Source of the DNA: Salpingoeca rosetta
Taxonomy: Eukaryota > Protista > Choanoflagellata
Length of the DNA: 22,223 nt
Assembly: GCA_033442325.1 (NCBI GenBank)
Contig: JAWQFM010000015.1
Coordinates: 1,466,687 to 1,488,909, forward strand
Direction: 5' to 3'
This document shows positions 57 to 10,200 of the stretch, one piece after another. A model generated the notes under the pieces. The model did no database searches. It worked only from the letters and a program-made list of their open reading frames with translations, and was not told where the DNA came from. The first letter of the stretch is position 1. Each line of letters starts with the position of its first letter. The position numbers were made by a program, and so were the translations under genes.

Positions 57-58
<2 letters not shown>

Positions 59-242
59 GCTTGAAGCGGGTAAAGGTGCCACCGCCACAGGGTGCCGAGC
101 AAGGCGTGTAGCCCCAGGACCACACACAGCCATTGGCATCCGTCATGGGTGGCTCGCCATCCTGCTGCGCCAACGCTGGGAGGCTGAGACCAACCCCACC
201 CAGCACCACCGCAACAACCACCACCGTGAACACCTGCGCCAT
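57..242 (-). CDS. First exon of a secreted/cell-surface protein with a thrombospondin type 1 (TSP1) repeat; the rest of the gene lies beyond the left edge
   Basis: Not in the ORF track. Reading the - strand from ATG at 242 gives 62 codons: MAQVFTVVVVAVVLGGVGLSLPALAQQDGEPPMTDANGCVWSWGYTPCSAPCGGGTFTRFKQ. It has a hydrophobic signal peptide (ALA/QQ cleavage-like site), then a W-S-W..PCSxxCGGGTxTR TSP1-type motif, and ends at a CAG|GTGTGT donor running into the terminal (GT)n. Confidence 0.75.
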
Positions 243-722
243 CTCTGACTGGCGTTGTTGTGTTGTTGATGATGGGAAAATTCGTGGTTCTGGGACACGC
301 ACGCACACGCAAGATGACGCAGGATGACGACATCGTGATCATCACATCACCACAAGGCCCTAAGGCCAGACCCCTTCAGCTTTTCACCCTTTCGTGTTCA
401 CACTACTATCAGCTGTTCCAGTGTTCCATGACTTCTTGCATTGATTGCTGTCTTACTTGGGACTTGTACCGCTGCCCTGTTGTTTGAGTGTTTGAGCGCA
501 AGTCCTCTGCCCCCCACCCCCCGCGCGCCCAAGTCCCGCCATGCGCACTCAACACTCGTTTCGGGTCGCTGAAAAGTTTTCCCACACGCCAGGACGGCAG
601 AAGGCCACAGCGGTCAGGCGGGCGCACCATTCGCCCAAAGGACAGTGTTTTGCTCCTTCATGATCCAATCGGGGTTCCTGATGGCCACATTTCACCCCCG
701 CTCCACACGCCAAACGTCGAGA

Positions 723-2291
723 ATGGCTGCTGCCAAGTCCATGTGCCGCTTGTGGCCGGGCGTCACCGTCGCCAGCGTCGCCGTCGTTCTGCTTGCGCTG
801 TGTTTGCTGCATAGCGTACCACCTGTCTCCGCTGTTGTGACTCGCTCCGTGACGCGGGGAAACGAGACCGTCACCCACCGCACCTTCGTTGTTGCCGCTC
901 TCAGCGACAAAGGTTGGTGATGACGCAAATCGACAGACCCACTTTGAACTTTTGAGCCTGGACCGAAAAGGAGTGCTTCTGTCTGACTTCTGTCTGGTTT
1001 GGCGTGTGGGGAACGACATCCAGCAGTCTGCCTCATCATCATCTTTGAAAGACACTTGGATACAGCCAATGAATGTGCTTCGAGTTTCGTGGTGACAACA
1101 TGTACAACGCTGAAGCGCACACCTTTCCTCCAAACTACATATCCTCACGTCTTGTCCCCTCCTTGAACACATACACACATACGTACATACACACATACAC
1201 ATACGTACATACACATACATACACAAATACACGCACGCACATACACACACGCATGCACACGCACGCACACAAATAGGCTTTGACTACTTCAACAAGACGC
1301 TCGCACCCACGTTCGACGTGTATCTGAACCGTGTGCTGAGCGAAAAGTACGACGGACTGGTGTCCGTCGTCACGTATCCAACGCAGTTTAAAGATCTCAT
1401 TGACGATGGCCTTGACGACAAGTATGACTTTGCTTTCACCAACCCGGCGCTGTTCACCTGCGTGGAGGCAGAGCTCGGGATGTCCGCACTGCTTACACTG
1501 CGTCGCTTTGATCTCGGTGAGGCTTGGTCCTGCCTTATGGATGTTGTTGTGTTTGTTCGTGTGGGTTGGCCCGCGTTGGGTTTCGGGACAAAGCACACAC
1601 AGGCGAGGCGCCAAGATGTTCTTGGTCACTCACTCTCTCCTGCTTGCGATATGATGATAGGCGAGGAGCTGAGCCAGTTTGGCGGCGTCATCTTCACACG
1701 TGCAGACCGCGACGACATCAACACCCTGCATGATGTGATCAACAAGCAGGTCGCCGCTGTGTCTTTCATCACGTTTGGTGGCTTCCAGTCGCAATGGGGC
1801 AAGCTTCGCGCCGCAGGCGTGGACTTTCTCGTCGACACGGAACAGGTGATTGGCACGAAGTGAAACAGCACGTGCTTTGCGTCAATGTCTCTGTGTCAAA
1901 TGCATGAAATAATGTGTGTGTATGTGGCTGCTGGGGGAATCTTGCCTTGCTTGAGTGCGTTTGGCAAGGTGTTGACTTTATGTTAAACTCGACCAGTACG
2001 GTCCGCTTCTGTGTCCACGCACACGCAAGACCTCCACGTATCTCACCACGTCAAAACGCTGTGGTTCTGATTTAACCCCTCTCTCCCCAGGTCAAGTTCA
2101 CTGGAGATGAGAACCTTGTCGTGGAGGAGGTCATGGAAGGCCGAAGTGACATTGGCTTCGTCACCACAGGCGTTCTCGAAGGTGTGTGGTTGTGCGATTG
2201 TAATGTACGCGTGGGACGTGCGTTTGGTTGTTTGATCGTGGTGCGCGTGAGTGGGCACGTGAGTGAGAGAGAGAGTGTGTGTGTGTGTGTG

Positions 2292-2324
<33 letters not shown>

Positions 2325-2974
2325 TGTGTGGGTGAATGAGCATATGAATGTGCGGCTGTGCCCTTGTGTGCTTGTGCTTATGTGTATCCATTTGTGCTGG
2401 ATCTGCATACCATGTACATTGCGCACGACTGGGCGTCTGCTTGTGTCTCACTCTGCAACTGCCACCGTCTACTGCATTCTGTTACCACCCACTCACGGTT
2501 CAGCCCAAGTGTTCAATGGAACGCTGGACCTGAAGCAAGTGAAGATCCTCGAGGCCGAGAACGTCATCACAACGGAGGGGAACGTGTTTCCCTTTATCAC
2601 ATCAACGGAGGTGCTTTCCCCTGAATGGGCGTTGGCTGCGCTCCCGACCGTTGACTGGCAGGTATGGTGTCAGCATACACGCCTGGCCATTCACCACTGT
2701 AAGCACTCCTGCGGAGTTGCAGAGAGCCCTAGCCAGCACGCCAAACGAAAACTTGCGACTCCACTCTTGCCACATTCACCAACCCCGCACACCCACTAAC
2801 TCACCCTCACCTTCGCACCCACACTCATAACCACTTCGTGTGCCATGGGTTAGATTCAAGTGGACGTGATGGATGCTCTGATTGCACTCGAACCAACTTC
2901 TGAGTTTGCCATTCAGGGCCGCTACGCTGCTTGGCAGGCACCACTCTCCTACACCGTCACCCGTGCCCTCCAGG

Positions 2975-3046
<72 letters not shown>

Positions 3047-4839
3047 AGTCTGACGTTTGTACTTGCTGGCACCGTGGGCTAGTTATCCTGCTGCATTCTG
3101 TGTTCGTTTGGGCAATCAGTGCTCCCATTCATATGCAACCCTGCGGAACACGTCTACTACATGCACACATACACACACGCATGCACAAAACTCGCTCACA
3201 CTCACACATCCTCATCCACACTCGCTGCCCCTCTTGCCCCCTCTCTAACACGCATGCACACACACACGTATGTACACGCACATGTCTTAGGTGTCCCTCG
3301 GGGTGATGTTTGCGGATGGTCTGGGCTCGTTCTCCTGTGTACGCACCAAGTCCATCATTGAGGCCGTCGTGTGCCCGTTTGGATTTGTCAAGAAGTCTGA
3401 TGAGGAAGTTGCCATGGGCTGTGAGCTCGCAGGCATCGACTGCAGCGAGGGCTACGACTGCCTGTGCCAGCCGTGCAAGCCAGCGTGCCCGGCCAACGCC
3501 CGCCTCCTGAGCACGGGCGACTGCGAGTGTGAGCCTGGCTACGTCCAGCTCGGCACAGCGTGCGCCCCTGTGGCCGTGCTCGTCATCACCATCCTCATCC
3601 CGCTCACAGCGTTTATCGTCGTCATTGTGCTAGTGGCCATGCGCTATCAGCAGAAGAAGGTCGACACGCTGTGGCACATCCGCCCCTTTGAGCTCAAGTT
3701 TGAGGACCCCGTTGACGTGCTTGGCGTGGGCACGTACGGTGTGGTTGTCAAGGCCGAGTACCGTGGCACGTCCGTCGCAGTCAAGCGCGTTGGTCCACCA
3801 GACCTCCACCGCAGGCGCACGCACGCCAGCCTGGCCACCCGCGACAAGCAGGGCGTGCTGAGCCCGGCTGTGCTTGCAGGCATTCGCGCCGCGCAGGGGT
3901 CGAGCTCCAACTTCAAGCGCAAGTCCCCAAGGAGCAAGCGCCGTTCAAAGACGTCAAGCACAGTGCTCGGGTCCATCAAGACGCGAGAGAGGAGAGCCAT
4001 GGAGTACATCGTGGAGGTGAGGTGGCAGGCGTGTGTTTGTGTATGTGGTGGTGTGAAAGATGTGCGCGGCGTGTGTGTGTGTGTGCAAGGTGTGTGTAAG
4101 TGTGTGTGCGCGCGCGTTCGTGCGTGCCTACACAGCTGTGAGTGAGCGTGTGGCAGCTTTCAGCGAGCTCAAGTCGAGCGCTGCTCCCTGTCAACCACTC
4201 ATAGACTCATATGCACCCGCATGTACTCCTGCTCATGGTGTTGGCCGTTATAGGTGTTTGATGAAGCTGCAGACCAAGCACAGGGCCACCAGTCGACAAC
4301 CAGGTAAGTGCAATGAACGACATGACGAGACAGCTGCTGCGGAGGATTGGGAAGGGGGGGGGGGAGCTAAGGCTTCGGTGAGGTACCTAGGCTGATGTGT
4401 TGCATGACGCAGACCTTGGTCCTGGCGGTGTGATTTGCATGAGACGACTCACTCCTTGAATCACGTCTTCCTTTTCACGGTGTTATGCAAACAGGGCCCG
4501 GACCACCAAGTCCGGAGAGCAGGGCGGACGCACGCTGTTTGGGCGCATGCTCGGAAAGGCGAGCACACGCGCCACCCTGATCAAGATGAGGTGGGTTTGC
4601 TCGTCTGTTTGTGTTTGTTCGTGGTACTAGCCCTGTATTGTATGCTGTGGCATGCCCTTGTTGTGGGAGTGGATCGTGGTTGCATGCTGTCACGAAGGTG
4701 CCGGCGATGCACCTCCCAAAGTGCGGTTGTCATTATGCATACGCGCTCGCCCTCTTTCTTTAATCATGCGCTCGCATGTTAACACATGCACACACACACA
4801 CACACGCATACACGCACGCGCACGCACGCACGCACACAC

Positions 4840-4879
<40 letters not shown>

Positions 4880-6233
4880 GCACACACACGCACACACACA
4901 CACACACACATGCACACACACACACACACACACACAGGGACAACTTCATTAAGGAGATGCGCACGCTGTCCAAGCTGCGGCACCCATGTGTGACGACGGT
5001 TATGGGAGCGGTGATGATCAAAGGATTTGAGCCGATGATGGTGATGGAGCACATGGACCTGGGAAGCCTCTACTCCATCCTGCACAACGAAACCATGGAG
5101 CTCGATGGTGAAACACGGTACCACGTGGTACGTAACAGTAAGGGCACGGTGTGTGGTGAGTGCTGTTGCGGTTGCGTGAGCTATGTGCTTGGTGTTAACA
5201 CCACTTGACCTTCTTTGCCTCGCTGCGTCACACCTCATGATGAGCCACCACATGATCACTGCCATTATCACACAGACGATCGATGTTGTCTCTGGCTGCC
5301 GGTTCCTGCACTCCAGCGATCCGCCCCTGATCCACGGCGACCTCAAGTCCCTCAATGTCCTCGTCGACTCAAAGTTCCGCGCAAAGGTTAGCTGGTGTGC
5401 TGGTATGGGTGTGTGCGTGCGTGCGTACATGTGTGTGTACATGTGTGTGTGTGTGTGTACATGTGTGTACATGTGTGTACCTGTGTGCGTGCGTGCATGT
5501 GTGCGTGCGTGCATGTGTGCGTGTGCGTGTGTGCGTGTGCGTGTATTTGCAAGTGTGCATAATTCGCTCGTTGTCAGCGCTCATCCTGGATCCCCACTGT
5601 TCCTCGCAGGTGTCTGACTTTGGCCTGAGCGAGTCTGGGAGCGGTAAGGCGTGCGGCACCCCGTACTGGATGGCCCCGGAGGTCCTGCGCGGCGAGCCAA
5701 CCAGCGTCGCCTCAGACGTCTACTCCTTTGCCATTATTCTGGTGAGTTGGGTATGATGGCGTGTGTGTGTTTAGGCATGCGTGTGTACCTTTGCACGTTT
5801 GCACGATTGCACCTTTGCACCGTGTCTTTCGTTCGTCCCTCATACTCTCATACTCTCGCACCAACTCACACGGTTTGCTCATCCCACCACCACCACCACC
5901 ACTGCCTCCAACCAGTTTGAGATCTTCAGCCGCAAGGACCCGTACCCGGCAGACACTGATCTCGAGAACACGTTGAAAGAGGTGATCAAGCGCAAGCGCC
6001 GTCCGCTCGTACCGGCCAACTGCCCCGATGTCATTGCGCAGCTGATGCGGGAGGCGTGGCACCCCGACCCGGATCGCCGGCCCTCCTTTGACGAGCTGGC
6101 CCGCCGCTTTGGGCACATTGACCCCTCTGATTGCCGTGTTGAGGAGTACAGCAAGAAGGGCAAGGACTCGAACAAGGTGCTCGAGGACGTCTTCCCGCCA
6201 CACATCGCAAAGGCCCTTCGCGAGGTGAGATGT

Positions 6234-6306
<73 letters not shown>

Positions 6307-8269
6307 ATACACGTGTGTGCACGTTTGTGTTTTTGTGTGTATTTGTGCGTGAATGTAATTGTGTGCTGCACCCTTTGCACCGGATGCACTTCTCCTCCGC
6401 ATACCCTCAAGTTGCAACCTCCTCCATTGTGCCCGCCTTTCCTCATCCATCCATCCAACCCTAAACCCACAACCCTGCTCTCTGCTCCTCTCTTCCTCTC
6501 CTTCGCACCACGTCGCACCACCAGGGCAAGAAGATTGAGCCCGAGCACCACGACTGCGTGACCATCTTCTTCTCGGACATTGTGGGCTTCACCACCATCA
6601 GCTCCACGCTCAACCCGCAGGACGTCATGAACATGCTCGATCGCCTCTACACCAAACTCGACGCCCTCGCCGACGAGATGGAGCTCTTCAAGGTCGAGAC
6701 CATCGGCGACGCCTACATGGCAGGTGCGGTCACAAGGTGGTGTGGGGGCGGTGCTTGTGTGTTGTGTGTGTGCATGTCTATGTGCGTGTCTGTGTCTCTG
6801 TGTTGCCTTTCACGAGTCTCATCGATATGATACGCAAGTTTTTTCGCTTCCTCACCATCATCACACGTCCCCTCTTGTCCTCCTCTCCCACCCCCTTCAT
6901 ACTCTCAGTGACGAACCTGTTGAAGGAGCAGAAGGACCACGCTGCGCGCATCGGCCGCTTTGCCGTTGCCGCCATCAAGGCCGCCAACAGCACGCTGATC
7001 AAGGAGGACGAGCCAGACCTCGGCTGCGTCAACATCCGCGTTGGCTTCCACTCCGGCCCCGTCGTTGCAAACGTCGTTGGCACGAAGAACCCGCGATACT
7101 GCCTCTTCGGCGACACGGTGCGCATTATGTGTGTGTGTGTGTGCGTGTGTTTGTGTGTGTGTGTGTGTTTGTCTGTCTGTGTATGTATGTGCGTGGGTGT
7201 GTCTGTGTGTGTCTGTGTCTGTGTCTGTGCTTGTGTGTGTCTTTGTATGTGTGTGTCTGCCACTGTTGTATCACGCCTTCTTTGCCTGCTCTCTCCCCAC
7301 CCCTTCTCCCCACCCTCTCGTCACGCATCCTCACGCCAACCCTCGTCAACCAACACATCCTCCACTCCCCCACCCCCACTACCCCAGGTCAACACGGCGT
7401 CGCGAATGGAGAGCAACAGCGAGAAGAACCGCATCCACATGTCTGAGGCCGCGGCGGAGCTGGTGTTGCAGCAGGCGCCAGACATGCTGCTGGAGCCACG
7501 CAAGGCAATGCACATCAAGGGCAAGGGCAAGATGCAGACGTACTTCCTGATTGCAGACGACATTGACCACGCCAGCAGCAGCGACACCGCCGCGCTGTTT
7601 GAGACGAAGCGCAAGGCGAGCAGTGGCGCCCACGACGCTGCTGACGACATGGCTGCTGCTGATGAGACAGTGCTGAGGGAGGCGGAAGAAGAAAGCGACG
7701 AGGCGGCAGACACCATGGCACGCAATGGTGATGTTGATGGCACCACCGAAACGGAAGCACCTGCAACGCCCAAGCGTGGACTGGAGCGCCGGGTCTCGAT
7801 TTCAAGCATTCTGCACGTGATCGGAGGCAACGACAAGGTCAGCAATGACAACCCCAGAAGCGATGCCAGAGACACATCGCAGCTCGATGGCAAGGGCGCA
7901 TGTGGCCCTTCGCGTTCGTTCTCGCGAACGACGAGCGATGCCGGCGTCGCGGACATGGCCGCCCAGTTGCGCGGTAGCGATGGTGAAGACGACGACGACG
8001 ACGACGACGATGGTGATGGTGCCAGTGTGAAGCTGAACTCATGGATGGGCAAAGCAGCGGGAAAGCATCCGCAGCGCAATGGCAGCGATGCTAGCAGCGG
8101 CGGCAGCAGCAGCAGCAGCGCAGCGAGCACAAGCAACAACGGGAGCACAAGCGGGTTTGGCTCAGACGACATTGGCCAGAGCAAGACTGACGCCCAGGGT
8201 CACAGGATGGCATGGACGGTGCAGGACACATCGCTCAACGACGCCGACAACAGCGAAGTCCTCATCTGA
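723..8269 (+). CDS. Receptor kinase-guanylyl cyclase (~1295 aa): signal peptide, PBP2/Phosphonate-bd-like ectodomain, Cys-rich EGF-like region, TM, TKL-type protein kinase, signalling helix, class III guanylyl cyclase, acidic/Ser-rich tail
   Basis: 16 phase-consistent GT-AG exons: 723-912, 1277-1516, 1661-1845, 2091-2181, 2504-2661, 2854-2973, 3291-4016, 4254-4303, 4495-4590, 4938-5127, 5276-5386, 5610-5741, 5916-6224, 6525-6723, 6909-7117, 7388-8269 (3888 nt). Ectodomain motifs: [40 protein letters not shown]: [24 protein letters not shown]. Kinase: [50 protein letters not shown]. Cyclase: [62 protein letters not shown]. Confidence 0.93.
2974..3043. repeat. Intronic (GT)n microsatellite beginning at the splice donor
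   Basis: CAG|GTGTGT... near-perfect run. Confidence 0.9.
4785..4936. repeat. Intronic (CA)n/(CACG)n tract abutting the splice acceptor
   Basis: The run ends ...CACACACAG|GGACAAC at the start of exon 10. Confidence 0.9.
6235..6305. repeat. Intronic (GT)n microsatellite
   Basis: Perfect run about 10 nt after the exon 13 donor. Confidence 0.9.
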
Positions 8270-8280
8270 GCTGAGGCGCG

Positions 8281-8314
8281 TTGTTGTTGTTGTTGTTGTT
8301 GTTGTTGCTGTTGC

Positions 8315-8359
<45 letters not shown>
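8281..8359. repeat. (TTG)n trinucleotide microsatellite in the probable 3' UTR of the receptor cyclase
   Basis: Begins 11 nt after the TGA; two CTG interruptions. Confidence 0.9.
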
Positions 8360-8569
8360 GAATCATCGCGTGGGTGTGTGAGTGCACGACGTGTCTCAGT
8401 TGTGCCGGGTTCAGCTTATTATTACCAGGGAGAGAGGAGAGGAGGTGATTTGATGACTTTTTATCGCGTTCGAGGCGGTGTGTAACTGCCGTTGGGTCAA
8501 TATACATGCATTCATGCACATACCAAGGGAAATGCGAGCACAGGCACCATCAACCAGATCACAATTAGC

Positions 8570-9360: not shown

Positions 9361-10127
9361 ATCAGTTGTAAATCGTGGCACTCATGCACCAAGCTGAACC
9401 GCTGCAAATTATGCAGCACAAACACACACAGACACACAGACATACCAGAATGGTCCGTGTGATGGACTGGCACTTGACAGTTCGCAGCATACGGCGAATG
9501 AGGTGTCCCCGAAACACAGATGCAATGCACGTGGCTGCAGCGTCTGCATCCCAGGTGCGAAGAACCGGCCGGCGTCGAAGTTGTTGTTGTTGTTGTTGTG
9601 GTGGTGGTGGTGGTGGCGGTGGTGCGGCAACAACATCACGCCGATGCTGATGCAAGTGGTGGTGTTGGCTGGTGCTTGCAGTGGTGGAAGGCATAGAGCT
9701 TGTTTCCAGCAAAATGTCAGCACTACTCAGGACGCCATCGTCGTCATCACTCCAGGGCTCTTCCCCCGCTGACGACACTACGACGTTGACTGCGCGCATC
9801 TCGTTGACAATGACAGAGGAATGCTTTGCCGGCGATGGCACCATGGTCAGAAATTGCGGCTGCAAGTCTTGTTCGCTGTCCAAGTCTTCAGACTCACGAC
9901 TCAAGCGCATGCCCCCGTCATTCCCATCGTTGTGCACGGTCTGTGCGTGGTGCATCGGTGGTTGTTTGTAATCTCCGTTGTTGTTGCCATTGTTGCTGCT
10001 GCTTGATGGTTTGTGCGGCTGTGATTTGTGGGTGCTGGTGTGTGGTTGGGCTGGTGCAGTTGACGTTTGGGGTCCGGCGGTGCTCAGGCGCAACAGCAGT
10101 GCAGCAACAGCATCTTCCACCTCATCC

Positions 10128-10200
<73 letters not shown>

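What the first reader, a model, noticed from the sequence alone, without database searches (positions are those of the whole stretch)
723..3330. Receptor guanylyl cyclase whose ectodomain looks like a bacterial phosphonate/PhnD-type periplasmic binding protein
Seen: the spliced ectodomain has [71 protein letters not shown]...PEWALAALP and WQAPLSY. Known: this ordered motif set is characteristic of class II (PBP2) Phosphonate-bd/PhnD-SsuA-transferrin domains, as in TtrS-like bacterial sensor kinases. Animal receptor GCs instead use a class I ANF-receptor Venus flytrap. Inference: a small-anion/nutrient-sensing cGMP receptor built on a bacterial-type sensor. The domain is split by six introns, so it is long-resident and not contamination. 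I recall similar architectures in algae/diatoms, so horizontal or ancient origin is open. This is the best candidate for an uncharacterised signalling system here.
Basis: partly seen in the sequence, partly recalled or inferred. Interest (0 to 1): 0.8.

Follow-up and report, generated by a model that had tools for sequence, protein, structure and literature searches.

The report
Choanoflagellate cGMP receptor with bacterial-type sensor
This is a real 16-exon choanoflagellate gene for a cell-surface receptor that makes cGMP and whose outer sensing domain is of the bacterial PhnD/TtrS (class II binding-protein) type instead of the animal type; the design is already present, unstudied, in databases for diatoms, green algae and other choanoflagellates, and this copy has lost the usual anion-binding residues.

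Summary
Observation confirmed. A 16-exon, all GT-AG gene (window 723-8269, + strand, 1295 aa) encodes signal peptide, PF12974 Phosphonate-bd (class II binding-protein) ectodomain, Cys-rich stalk, one TM helix, TKL-type kinase and a GTP-type class III cyclase. Six introns split the ectodomain.

The spliced ectodomain aligns end to end with bacterial TtrS-type sensor domains (112-182 bits). A model of the 60%-identical Microstomoeca roanoka orthologue (pLDDT 95) matches PtxB, HtxB, ArrX and PhnD, not ANF receptors.

It is not unique:
- At least 14 of 16 PF12974 loci in this genome (Salpingoeca rosetta by paralogue names) sit upstream of a cyclase.
- Public paralogues are named "TKL/DICTY4/DRK protein kinase".
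- The same collinear architecture occurs in diatoms, Tetraselmis, a pedinophyte and Choanoeca.
- No paper describing it was found.

The "small-anion sensor" reading is weakened for this copy. The family-wide Arg is Thr230, the His/Gln at PtxB's oxyanion His is Glu212, and the LYPEW Tyr is Ser274. The orthologue and three paralogues share these changes.

The scan's first readers flagged the same receptor type at three other loci of this genome.

The parts
723..8269 (+). Whole coding region, 16 exons, 1295 codons plus stop. Exons: 723-912, 1277-1516, 1661-1845, 2091-2181, 2504-2661, 2854-2973, 3291-4016, 4254-4303, 4495-4590, 4938-5127, 5276-5386, 5610-5741, 5916-6224, 6525-6723, 6909-7117, 7388-8269.
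   Evidence: Hand-built model; every intron is GT..AG and the frame is kept. It is collinear with M. roanoka P0284 at 66.6% identity over 1060 aa with no gap at any junction.
723..833 (+). Signal peptide or N-terminal hydrophobic leader (aa 1-37).
   Evidence: One of only two hydrophobic segments in the protein (Kyte-Doolittle scan); read from the sequence.
885..3296 (+). PF12974 Phosphonate-bd / class II binding-protein sensor domain (aa ~55-330), spliced from the end of exon 1, exons 2-6 and the start of exon 7. It is interrupted by introns 913-1276, 1517-1660, 1846-2090, 2182-2503, 2662-2853 and 2974-3290.
   Evidence: Pfam hits on the exon pieces. End-to-end phmmer alignment to bacterial PF12974 sensors at 112-182 bits. 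The family profile hits PtxB at 1.8e-15 and ArrX at 8.8e-10. The orthologue model matches PtxB, HtxB, ArrX and PhnD.
2109..2111 (+). Codon of Glu212. It sits at the position of the oxyanion-binding His155 of P. stutzeri PtxB. This position is His in 20 of 26 bacterial sensors and Gln in 41 of 50 other eukaryotic members.
   Evidence: Profile alignment, ligand residues from PMC5700983, column counts.
2163..2165 (+). Codon of Thr230. It replaces the Arg of the GFVRTD motif, which is Arg in 26 of 26 bacterial and 49 of 50 other eukaryotic members.
   Evidence: The same change is Ser in the M. roanoka orthologue and Thr in three S. rosetta paralogues.
2617..2619 (+). Codon of Ser274. It replaces the Tyr of the LYPEW motif, which is Tyr in 26 of 26 bacterial and 42 of 50 other eukaryotic members.
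3336..3563 (+). Cys-rich stalk (aa 344-419, 11 Cys).
   Evidence: Cys positions. Homologous stalks are found only in the eukaryotic relatives (the 'cysTM' hits). Pfam gives only a weak hEGF hint, E 0.74.
3567..3641 (+). Single transmembrane helix (aa ~421-445).
   Evidence: Hydrophobicity scan.
3705..6116 (+). TKL-type protein kinase domain (aa ~467-830, spliced). Motifs: GVGTYGVV 473-480, VAVK Lys493, Glu625, HGDLKSLN 702-709, DFG 722-724, APE 741-743. A ~120-aa basic insert lies at aa 497-617.
   Evidence: Motif positions. Relatives carry PF07714/PF00069. 50-54% identity to diatom kinase-cyclases.
6549..7561 (+). Class III cyclase catalytic domain (aa ~875-1060, exons 14-16). It has the metal-binding Asp in FFSDIVGF and IGDAYM, the GTP-type Glu924 in KVETIGD, Cys997 in RYCLFGD, and Asn/Arg in NTASRMES.
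   Evidence: PF00211 hits on the exon pieces. Motifs. The reading of the specificity residues rests on established knowledge of class III cyclases.
7562..8266 (+). Low-complexity acidic/Ser-rich C-terminal tail (aa 1061-1295).
   Evidence: Translation. It is not conserved with the M. roanoka orthologue.

Best explanation
The gene encodes a type I membrane receptor of a protist family with this layout: signal peptide, class II (PhnD/TtrS-type, PF12974) Venus-flytrap sensor, Cys-rich stalk, one TM helix, TKL-type kinase, homodimeric GTP-specific class III cyclase.

Proposed mechanism (inferred, not shown): a small extracellular ligand binds in the cleft between the two lobes. Lobe closure is passed through the rigid Cys-rich stalk and TM helix to the kinase domain and the dimeric cyclase, changing cGMP synthesis.

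The sensor descends from the subfamily used by bacterial TtrS-like histidine kinases and GGDEF proteins. In this copy, its M. roanoka orthologue and three S. rosetta paralogues, the putative cleft residues are remodelled: Arg to Thr/Ser, His/Gln to Glu, Tyr to Ser. The ligand is therefore probably not a phosph(on)ate-like oxyanion. A neutral or cationic small molecule is more likely.

The gene is one of at least 14 PF12974-cyclase genes in the genome. Their cleft residues fall into at least three types, which fits a diversified chemoreceptor repertoire.
For: Shown:
- Gene model and architecture.
- PF12974 homology over the full domain.
- Class II fold of the 60%-identical orthologue: pLDDT 95.1, top Foldseek hits PtxB, HtxB, ArrX, PhnD and AioX at E 6e-19 to 1e-13, TM 0.67-0.80.
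- No ANF_receptor match at the locus.
- Cyclase catalytic and GTP-specifying residues are present.
- 14 of 16 PF12974 loci have a PF00211 match 4-5 kb downstream on the same strand.
- Collinear full-length homologues in M. roanoka, Choanoeca perplexa, S. rosetta paralogues, diatom-like sequences, Tetraselmis and Pedinophyceae.
- Cleft positions mapped through the PtxB profile alignment and the published ligand residues. They lie at the N-termini of two lobe-2 helices and the end of a strand in the model's secondary structure.
- Column statistics and paralogue comparison.
Against: - No ligand, no cGMP measurement and no expression data.
- The cleft assignment rests on a sequence-profile alignment at about 18% identity to PtxB; I had no coordinates to verify side-chain orientation.
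- Loss of the conserved Arg, His/Gln and Tyr could equally mean a decayed, non-binding site.
- The kinase looks catalytically competent, so cGMP may not be the only or the main output.
Confidence: 0.72

Rival explanations
1. One reading: the ectodomain senses a small inorganic or organic oxyanion (phosphate, phosphonate, sulfonate, thiosulfate or tetrathionate) and reports nutrient status through cGMP.
For: The domain belongs to PF12974. Its solved members bind phosphite, phosphonates, arsenate and arsenite. The nearest bacterial relatives are labelled TtrS. The Thr181-x-Gly-Gly turn still sits at a helix N-terminus, where backbone amides could hold an anion.
Against: PtxB's S124-T125-S126-H155 ligands align to T-F-G...E in this protein. 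A Glu in place of the oxyanion-binding His would repel an anion. The subfamily's near-invariant Arg is Thr. One paralogue (C12) keeps His, Arg and Tyr and is a better anion-sensor candidate.
Confidence: 0.12
2. The ectodomain of this copy no longer binds a ligand. It serves as a dimerisation or scaffold module, or needs a co-receptor, and the protein is regulated from inside, for example by the kinase domain or phosphorylation of the basic insert.
For: Three of the most conserved subfamily residues are lost. Pocket positions vary widely among paralogues.
Against: The same three replacements are kept between S. rosetta and M. roanoka and in three further paralogues. The rest of the domain stays 60% identical with all structural motifs (FGG, DxG, PEW) intact. 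This looks like a conserved new state and not decay.
Confidence: 0.13
3. It is a canonical animal-type receptor guanylyl cyclase (ANF-receptor ectodomain, pseudokinase homology domain), and the PhnD resemblance is spurious.
For: The overall order (ectodomain, TM, kinase-like domain, cyclase) and the HG-LKS-N catalytic-loop variant recall animal RGCs. The genome also has two loci where an ANF_receptor match lies next to a cyclase match, on contig C9.
Against: There is no PF01094 hit in the window. PF12974 homology is strong and the fold is class II. The kinase-cyclase half is 50-54% identical to diatom proteins, but only 38-44% identical on short pieces to the C9 ANF-type gene of the same genome. 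In a quick tree (SH-aLRT only) the five animal sequences in hand split off on a long branch with 100% support; several of them look like atypical or merged models. Asp704, DFG and APE are present.
Confidence: 0.01
4. It is bacterial contamination or a very recent bacterial insertion mis-joined to a eukaryotic cyclase gene.
For: The best non-eukaryotic matches are bacterial sensor kinases at up to 182 bits.
Against: Six spliceosomal introns lie inside the domain. A eukaryote-only Cys-rich stalk follows it. An orthologue exists in a transcriptome of another choanoflagellate. In a careful tree, all 26 bacterial sensors lie on one side of a branch (99/99) and all eukaryotic ones on the other.
Confidence: 0.01

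Closest known systems
Salpingoeca rosetta 'TKL/DICTY4/DRK protein kinase' proteins (EGD74805.1 / XP_004992450.1 / F2UDV5; EGD75740.1; EGD78530.1) and Microstomoeca roanoka EP00043_P017580
   Same: Same full architecture: PF12974, stalk, TM, PF07714/PF00069 kinase and PF00211 cyclase. They are collinear with the window protein. The M. roanoka protein is 66.6% identical over 1060 aa and F2UDV5 is 50.8% identical over 1030 aa.
   Different: These are paralogues or an orthologue, not this gene; records of the window's own genome seem to be withheld by the tools. They are named only as kinases or 'guanylate cyclase'. F2UDV5 keeps the Arg, His and Tyr cleft residues that this gene has lost.
Diatom and green-algal receptor kinase-guanylyl cyclases (e.g. 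Pedinophyceae CAG9460527.1, Tetraselmis striata EP00873_P018919, Rhizosolenia and Seminavis proteins)
   Same: PF12974 plus kinase plus cyclase with the same Cys-rich stalk. 32-34% identity in ectodomain and stalk, and 50-54% in the kinase-cyclase half.
   Different: In diatoms the same kinase-cyclase chassis also carries PF01094, PF13416, PF13458, PF12849 or PAN ectodomains. The diatom-like P0183 gene is intronless, and the pedinophyte gene has one intron near the signal peptide. Most of these relatives keep the Arg and Gln cleft residues.
Bacterial TtrS-like sensor histidine kinases and GGDEF proteins with a periplasmic PF12974 domain
   Same: Same sensor subfamily, with shared motifs FGGVIF, S-x-GG-x-Q, DxGFV, FPF-ST and LxPEW. 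112-182 bits to the spliced ectodomain.
   Different: Their outputs are HisKA/HATPase, PAS and GGDEF, not kinase plus cyclase. They have no Cys-rich stalk. Arg, His and Tyr are invariant in them and replaced here.
PtxB / HtxB / PhnD / ArrX / AioX periplasmic binding proteins (PDB 5O2J, 5ME4, 3P7I, 6X6B, 6ESK)
   Same: Same class II two-lobe fold and same Pfam family. ArrX and AioX also act as sensors for histidine kinases (PMC8050422).
   Different: They are free periplasmic proteins. Their STS-H oxyanion site is not conserved here.
Animal receptor guanylyl cyclases (GC-A/NPR1 type)
   Same: Single-pass receptor with a Venus-flytrap-like ectodomain, a kinase-like domain and a GTP-specific class III cyclase with Glu/Cys specificity residues.
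   Different: Animal receptors use the class I ANF_receptor fold and a pseudokinase. This protein has a class II PF12974 fold and a kinase with Lys, Asp, DFG and APE intact, and it falls outside the animal sequences sampled in a quick kinase-cyclase tree.

Membership tests
Pfam PF12974 Phosphonate-bd (PhnD / class II periplasmic binding protein) | Profile HMM match above the curated cut-off of 27 bits | tested here: met
   29.9 bits on exons 2-3 alone, and exon 4 continues the profile. The orthologue and relatives score 66-84 bits. All 57 top protein-language-model neighbours are PF12974.
Pfam PF12974 Phosphonate-bd (PhnD / class II periplasmic binding protein) | Two-lobe class II fold | tested here: met
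   Tested on the 60%-identical M. roanoka orthologue, not on this protein. AF2 pLDDT 95.1. The Foldseek top 42 PDB hits are PtxB, HtxB, ArrX, PhnD, AioX, GpxB and XAC2383, followed by transferrin lobes.
Pfam PF12974 Phosphonate-bd (PhnD / class II periplasmic binding protein) | STS-H phosph(on)ate-binding residues (PtxB S124, T125, S126, H155) | tested here: not met
   They align to T181, F182, G183 and E212. This lowers the claim 'binds phosph(on)ate', not the fold membership.
TtrS-type fused sensor subfamily of PF12974 | Conserved motifs FGGVIF, DxGFVRTD and LYPEW, with near-invariant Arg and Tyr | tested here: inconclusive
   The backbone motifs are present (FGGVIF 150-155, DIGFV 225-229, PEW 275-277). 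The Arg is Thr230 and the Tyr is Ser274.
Animal receptor guanylyl cyclase (RGC) family | ANF_receptor (PF01094) class I ectodomain | tested here: not met
   No PF01094 match in the window; eight matches over the cut-off elsewhere in the genome.
Animal receptor guanylyl cyclase (RGC) family | Kinase homology domain that lacks the catalytic Asp (pseudokinase) | tested here: not met
   HGD with Asp704, Lys493, Glu625, DFG and APE are all present. Activity itself was not tested.
Animal receptor guanylyl cyclase (RGC) family | Class III cyclase with GTP-specifying Glu and Cys and a full catalytic set | tested here: met
   KVETIGD (Glu924), RYCLFGD (Cys997), FFSD and IGD metal-binding Asp, NTASR.
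Animal receptor guanylyl cyclase (RGC) family | Kinase-cyclase module groups with animal RGCs | tested here: not met
   In a quick tree (SH-aLRT only) the five animal sequences split from all protist kinase-cyclases with 100% support. The kinase part scores only 43.6 bits to a fish RGC model, against more than 480 bits to diatom proteins. The animal sample is small and partly atypical.
Protist PF12974-stalk-TM-TKL kinase-cyclase receptors | Collinear homology over all modules | tested here: met
   Single HSP over aa 21-1078 to M. roanoka. Ordered HSPs for ectodomain, stalk/TM and kinase-cyclase to diatom-like and green-algal proteins.

The most novel reading that the evidence does not exclude
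The window gene, its M. roanoka orthologue and three S. rosetta paralogues form a derived receptor subtype. Their remodelled cleft (Glu212, Thr230, Ser274 in place of His/Gln, Arg, Tyr) would recognise a non-anionic cue, for example an amine or a bacterial or prey-derived metabolite. The family of at least 14 PF12974-cyclase genes would then be the long-sought chemoreceptor repertoire through which choanoflagellates turn environmental and bacterial signals into cGMP, and possibly kinase, signalling.
Probability: 0.12. Interest if true: 0.8.

Novelty: new variant of a known kind. Interest (0 to 1): 0.5.

Why it matters
[quoted passage not shown] They respond to bacterial and environmental cues, and cGMP controls behaviour in at least one species, yet the surface receptors that feed cGMP signalling are unknown.

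This locus shows that most membrane guanylyl cyclases of this genome do not use the animal ANF-type sensor. They use a bacterial-type class II binding domain on a Cys-rich stalk, a module that other protists also attach to class C 7TM receptors, histidine kinases and plain kinases.

That gives a concrete, testable set of candidate chemoreceptors: a soluble ectodomain for ligand screens, and established knock-out methods in the host. The remodelled cleft of this subgroup offers a natural specificity switch to study. The value is tempered because the architecture is already visible in public domain annotations and is widespread in algae.

Tried and rejected
I did not send those places to any search tool afterwards. 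The only hint of expression is that two probable RNA runs hold 0.46 of the sampled words while exons make up 0.52 of the stretch; this is not evidence.
The orthologue was folded instead.
- Finding the gene's own public record: neither the representative search nor the word searches returned it. A tool note says records of the window's genome may be left out.
- A single-sequence PDB search with exons 2-3 gave nothing; the family profile was needed.
- Shared ancient introns with algae: not found. The diatom-like gene is intronless and the pedinophyte gene has one intron in the leader, so introns say nothing about vertical descent versus eukaryote-to-eukaryote transfer.
- Donor or origin: the ectodomain tree leaves the eukaryotic backbone unresolved. 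The choanoflagellate clade is not nested in the diatom clade, and the four long-branch rows are unreliable.
- Literature: nine full-text searches found no paper on a PhnD/PF12974-type ectodomain on a eukaryotic cyclase. The library lacks most subscription journals.
- Class I ANF fold and contamination were considered and rejected; see the rival explanations.
Full report
**1. What is in the sequence**

The window is eukaryotic DNA: 52-65% GC per 1-kb window, with many CA/GT microsatellites inside introns. From three-frame translations I built a + strand gene of 16 exons, 723-8269. All 15 introns are GT..AG and the frame is kept, giving 1295 residues.

Exons 1-7 encode everything outside the membrane, so six introns interrupt the ectodomain, as stated.

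The model is independently supported. A transcript-derived protein of Microstomoeca roanoka (EukProt EP00043_P017580, P0284) aligns at 66.6% identity over 1060 residues. There is no gap at any of the 15 exon junctions, and only a 1-residue gap three residues after junction 1.

**2. Architecture**

Only two hydrophobic segments exist: aa ~10-37 (leader) and ~421-445 (TM helix). The order of modules is:
- A PF12974 domain (aa ~55-330).
- A stalk with 11 Cys (aa 344-419).
- The TM helix.
- A kinase domain with Gly-loop, Lys493, Glu625, HGD (Asp704), DFG and APE, and a ~120-residue basic insert.
- A class III cyclase. It has both metal-binding Asp, the Glu (KVETIGD) and Cys (RYCLFGD) that specify GTP in known guanylyl cyclases (established knowledge), and the Asn/Arg pair.
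- An unconserved low-complexity tail.

**3. Is the ectodomain really PhnD-type?**

Yes. The evidence is:
- Exons 2-3, read through the in-frame intron 2, already pass Pfam's cut-off for PF12974 (29.9 against 27 bits). Exon 4 continues the profile at positions 140-168.
- A six-frame scan of the whole genome places a PF12974 hit on this locus. No PF01094 ANF_receptor hit falls here, although eight loci elsewhere pass that model's cut-off.
- Protein-language-model neighbours are all PF12974.
- The spliced ectodomain aligns over residues 23-289 of 308 with a bacterial fragment labelled TtrS (112 bits). It scores 182 bits to a bacterial hybrid histidine kinase.
- A profile of 79 family ectodomains hits PtxB (1.8e-15), a phosphonate-binding protein (5JVB), ArrX (8.8e-10) and AioX in the PDB.

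I could not hand the spliced sequence to the folding tool. I therefore folded the orthologue's ectodomain, which is 60% identical, using that alignment. The result was pLDDT 95.1 and pTM 0.90. The best Foldseek matches are PtxB, HtxB, ArrX, PhnD and AioX (E 6e-19 to 1e-13, TM 0.67-0.80), followed by transferrin lobes. No ANF receptor appears among them.

**4. It is a family, and it is in the databases**

The genome is 55.4 Mb in 68 contigs. It has 16 PF12974 loci, and 14 of them have a PF00211 cyclase match 4-5 kb downstream on the same strand. Two other loci on C9 pair an ANF_receptor match with a cyclase match, so the animal-type design also seems to be present.

Paralogues found by a word search are public proteins named "TKL/DICTY4/DRK protein kinase [Salpingoeca rosetta]". 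UniRef calls them "guanylate cyclase", and their precomputed Pfam domains include PF12974, the two kinase models and, in two of the three, PF00211. They match the query locus at 88-97% identity.

The same collinear architecture occurs in:
- Choanoeca perplexa.
- A pedinophyte (CAG9460527.1).
- Tetraselmis striata.
- Thousands of diatom-like sequences.

In the diatom-like sequences the kinase-cyclase chassis also carries PF01094, PF13416, PF13458, PF12849 or PAN ectodomains. Conversely, the PF12974-plus-stalk module is also fused to class C 7TM domains, to histidine-kinase/receiver modules, and to kinases alone.

**5. Relationships**

In a careful tree of 81 ectodomains, the 26 bacterial sensors (PAS, HisKA, HATPase and GGDEF outputs) lie on one side of a branch supported 99/99. 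All stalk-bearing eukaryotic sequences lie on the other side. Output types are intermixed among the eukaryotes. Within this sample that fits one origin of the eukaryotic module followed by domain shuffling. The sample is only the best 150 hits to my query, and there is no outgroup.

The window protein groups with M. roanoka (100/100) and then with S. rosetta F2UDV5 (99/91). The deeper backbone is unresolved, so neither vertical descent nor algal transfer can be claimed.

The kinase-cyclase half is 50-54% identical to diatom proteins. It is only 38-44% identical on short pieces to the C9 ANF-type gene of the same genome. In a quick tree (SH-aLRT only) the five animal sequences I had split off with 100% support; several of them look like atypical or merged models.

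Intron positions are shared with the C12 paralogue. They are not shared with a pedinophyte gene, which has one leader intron, or with an intronless diatom-like gene.

**6. The ligand site**

In PtxB the phosphite oxygens are held by S124, T125, S126 and H155 (PMC5700983). The profile alignment puts these on Thr181, Phe182, Gly183 and Glu212 of the window protein.

In the orthologue model, the equivalents sit at the N-termini of two lobe-2 helices, and Thr230's equivalent sits at the end of a strand (secondary structure). These are the usual cleft positions in this fold. This is an inference, because I had no coordinates.

Across the family:

| Position in the window protein | Bacterial sensors | Other eukaryotic members | Window protein | M. 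roanoka orthologue |
|---|---|---|---|---|
| 212 | His in 20 of 26 | Gln in 41 of 50 | Glu | Glu |
| 230 | Arg in 26 of 26 | Arg in 49 of 50 | Thr | Ser |
| 274 | Tyr in 26 of 26 | Tyr in 42 of 50 | Ser | Ser |

Among 15 other S. rosetta loci:
- Two (C33:71k and C1:2908k) share the full Glu/Thr/Ser state; C33:218k shares Glu and Thr but has Ile at the third position.
- One (C12) keeps His, Arg and Tyr.
- The rest have a third pattern: D-F-A-S at 181-184, His/Gln/Pro/Ser at 212, and Gln/Pro at 230.

The changes are conserved between species, and the rest of the domain is intact. I therefore read them as a changed specificity and not as decay. Replacing Arg by Thr and His/Gln by Glu argues against an oxyanion ligand.

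**7. Verdict**

The receptor is best filed as a member of a widespread but unstudied protist family, not as an animal-type RGC. The proposed anion ligand is unlikely for this copy.

Nine full-text searches found no paper on this architecture. It is, however, visible in public domain annotations. First readers of this scan flagged it at three other loci of the same genome.

Limits:
- There is no fold of the exact protein.
- There is no functional data.

Noticed in passing
window 57-243, minus strand: Start of another gene that runs leftwards out of the window. It has an ATG at 243, a hydrophobic leader, and then WSWGYTPCSAPCGGGTFTR, which reads like a thrombospondin type 1 repeat. Read by eye.
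   Followed up: no
window 3705-6116 (kinase domain; insert aa 497-617 encoded by 3795-4016, 4254-4303, 4495-4590): The kinase keeps Lys493, Glu625, Asp704 (in HGD, not HRD), DFG and APE. It carries a ~120-residue basic, Ser/Arg/Lys-rich insert between strand 3 and helix C, partly on two tiny exons. The M. roanoka orthologue keeps blocks of it ([21 protein letters not shown]). The protein may therefore have two outputs, as another first-reader note (s1-443250) suggests.
   Followed up: partly
G000 contigs C21:508-542 kb and C22:480-562 kb: Tandem clusters of three near-identical PF12974-cyclase genes on each contig; their cyclase matches have identical scores. This points to recent local duplication of this receptor family.
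   Followed up: partly
P0026, P0008, P0030, P0067 (metagenomic eukaryote-like proteins): Class C 7TM receptors (PF00003) whose ectodomain is PF12974 plus the same Cys-rich stalk, in place of the usual ANF_receptor Venus flytrap. P0026 has the highest-scoring ectodomain outside the choanoflagellates (194 bits).
   Followed up: partly
window 8276-8360, 9580-9640 and 10120-10200: Long (GTT)n / (GTG)n trinucleotide runs directly after the stop codon and inside the next gene region on the other strand. Introns of the cyclase gene hold (CA)n/(GT)n runs of 60-150 bases.
   Followed up: no
G000:C9:1797000-1806500 (L014) and C9:1818700-1823350: Two loci where an ANF_receptor match lies next to cyclase matches. 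These are probable animal-type receptor guanylyl cyclases in the same genome, far more distant from the window gene than diatom proteins are.
   Followed up: partly
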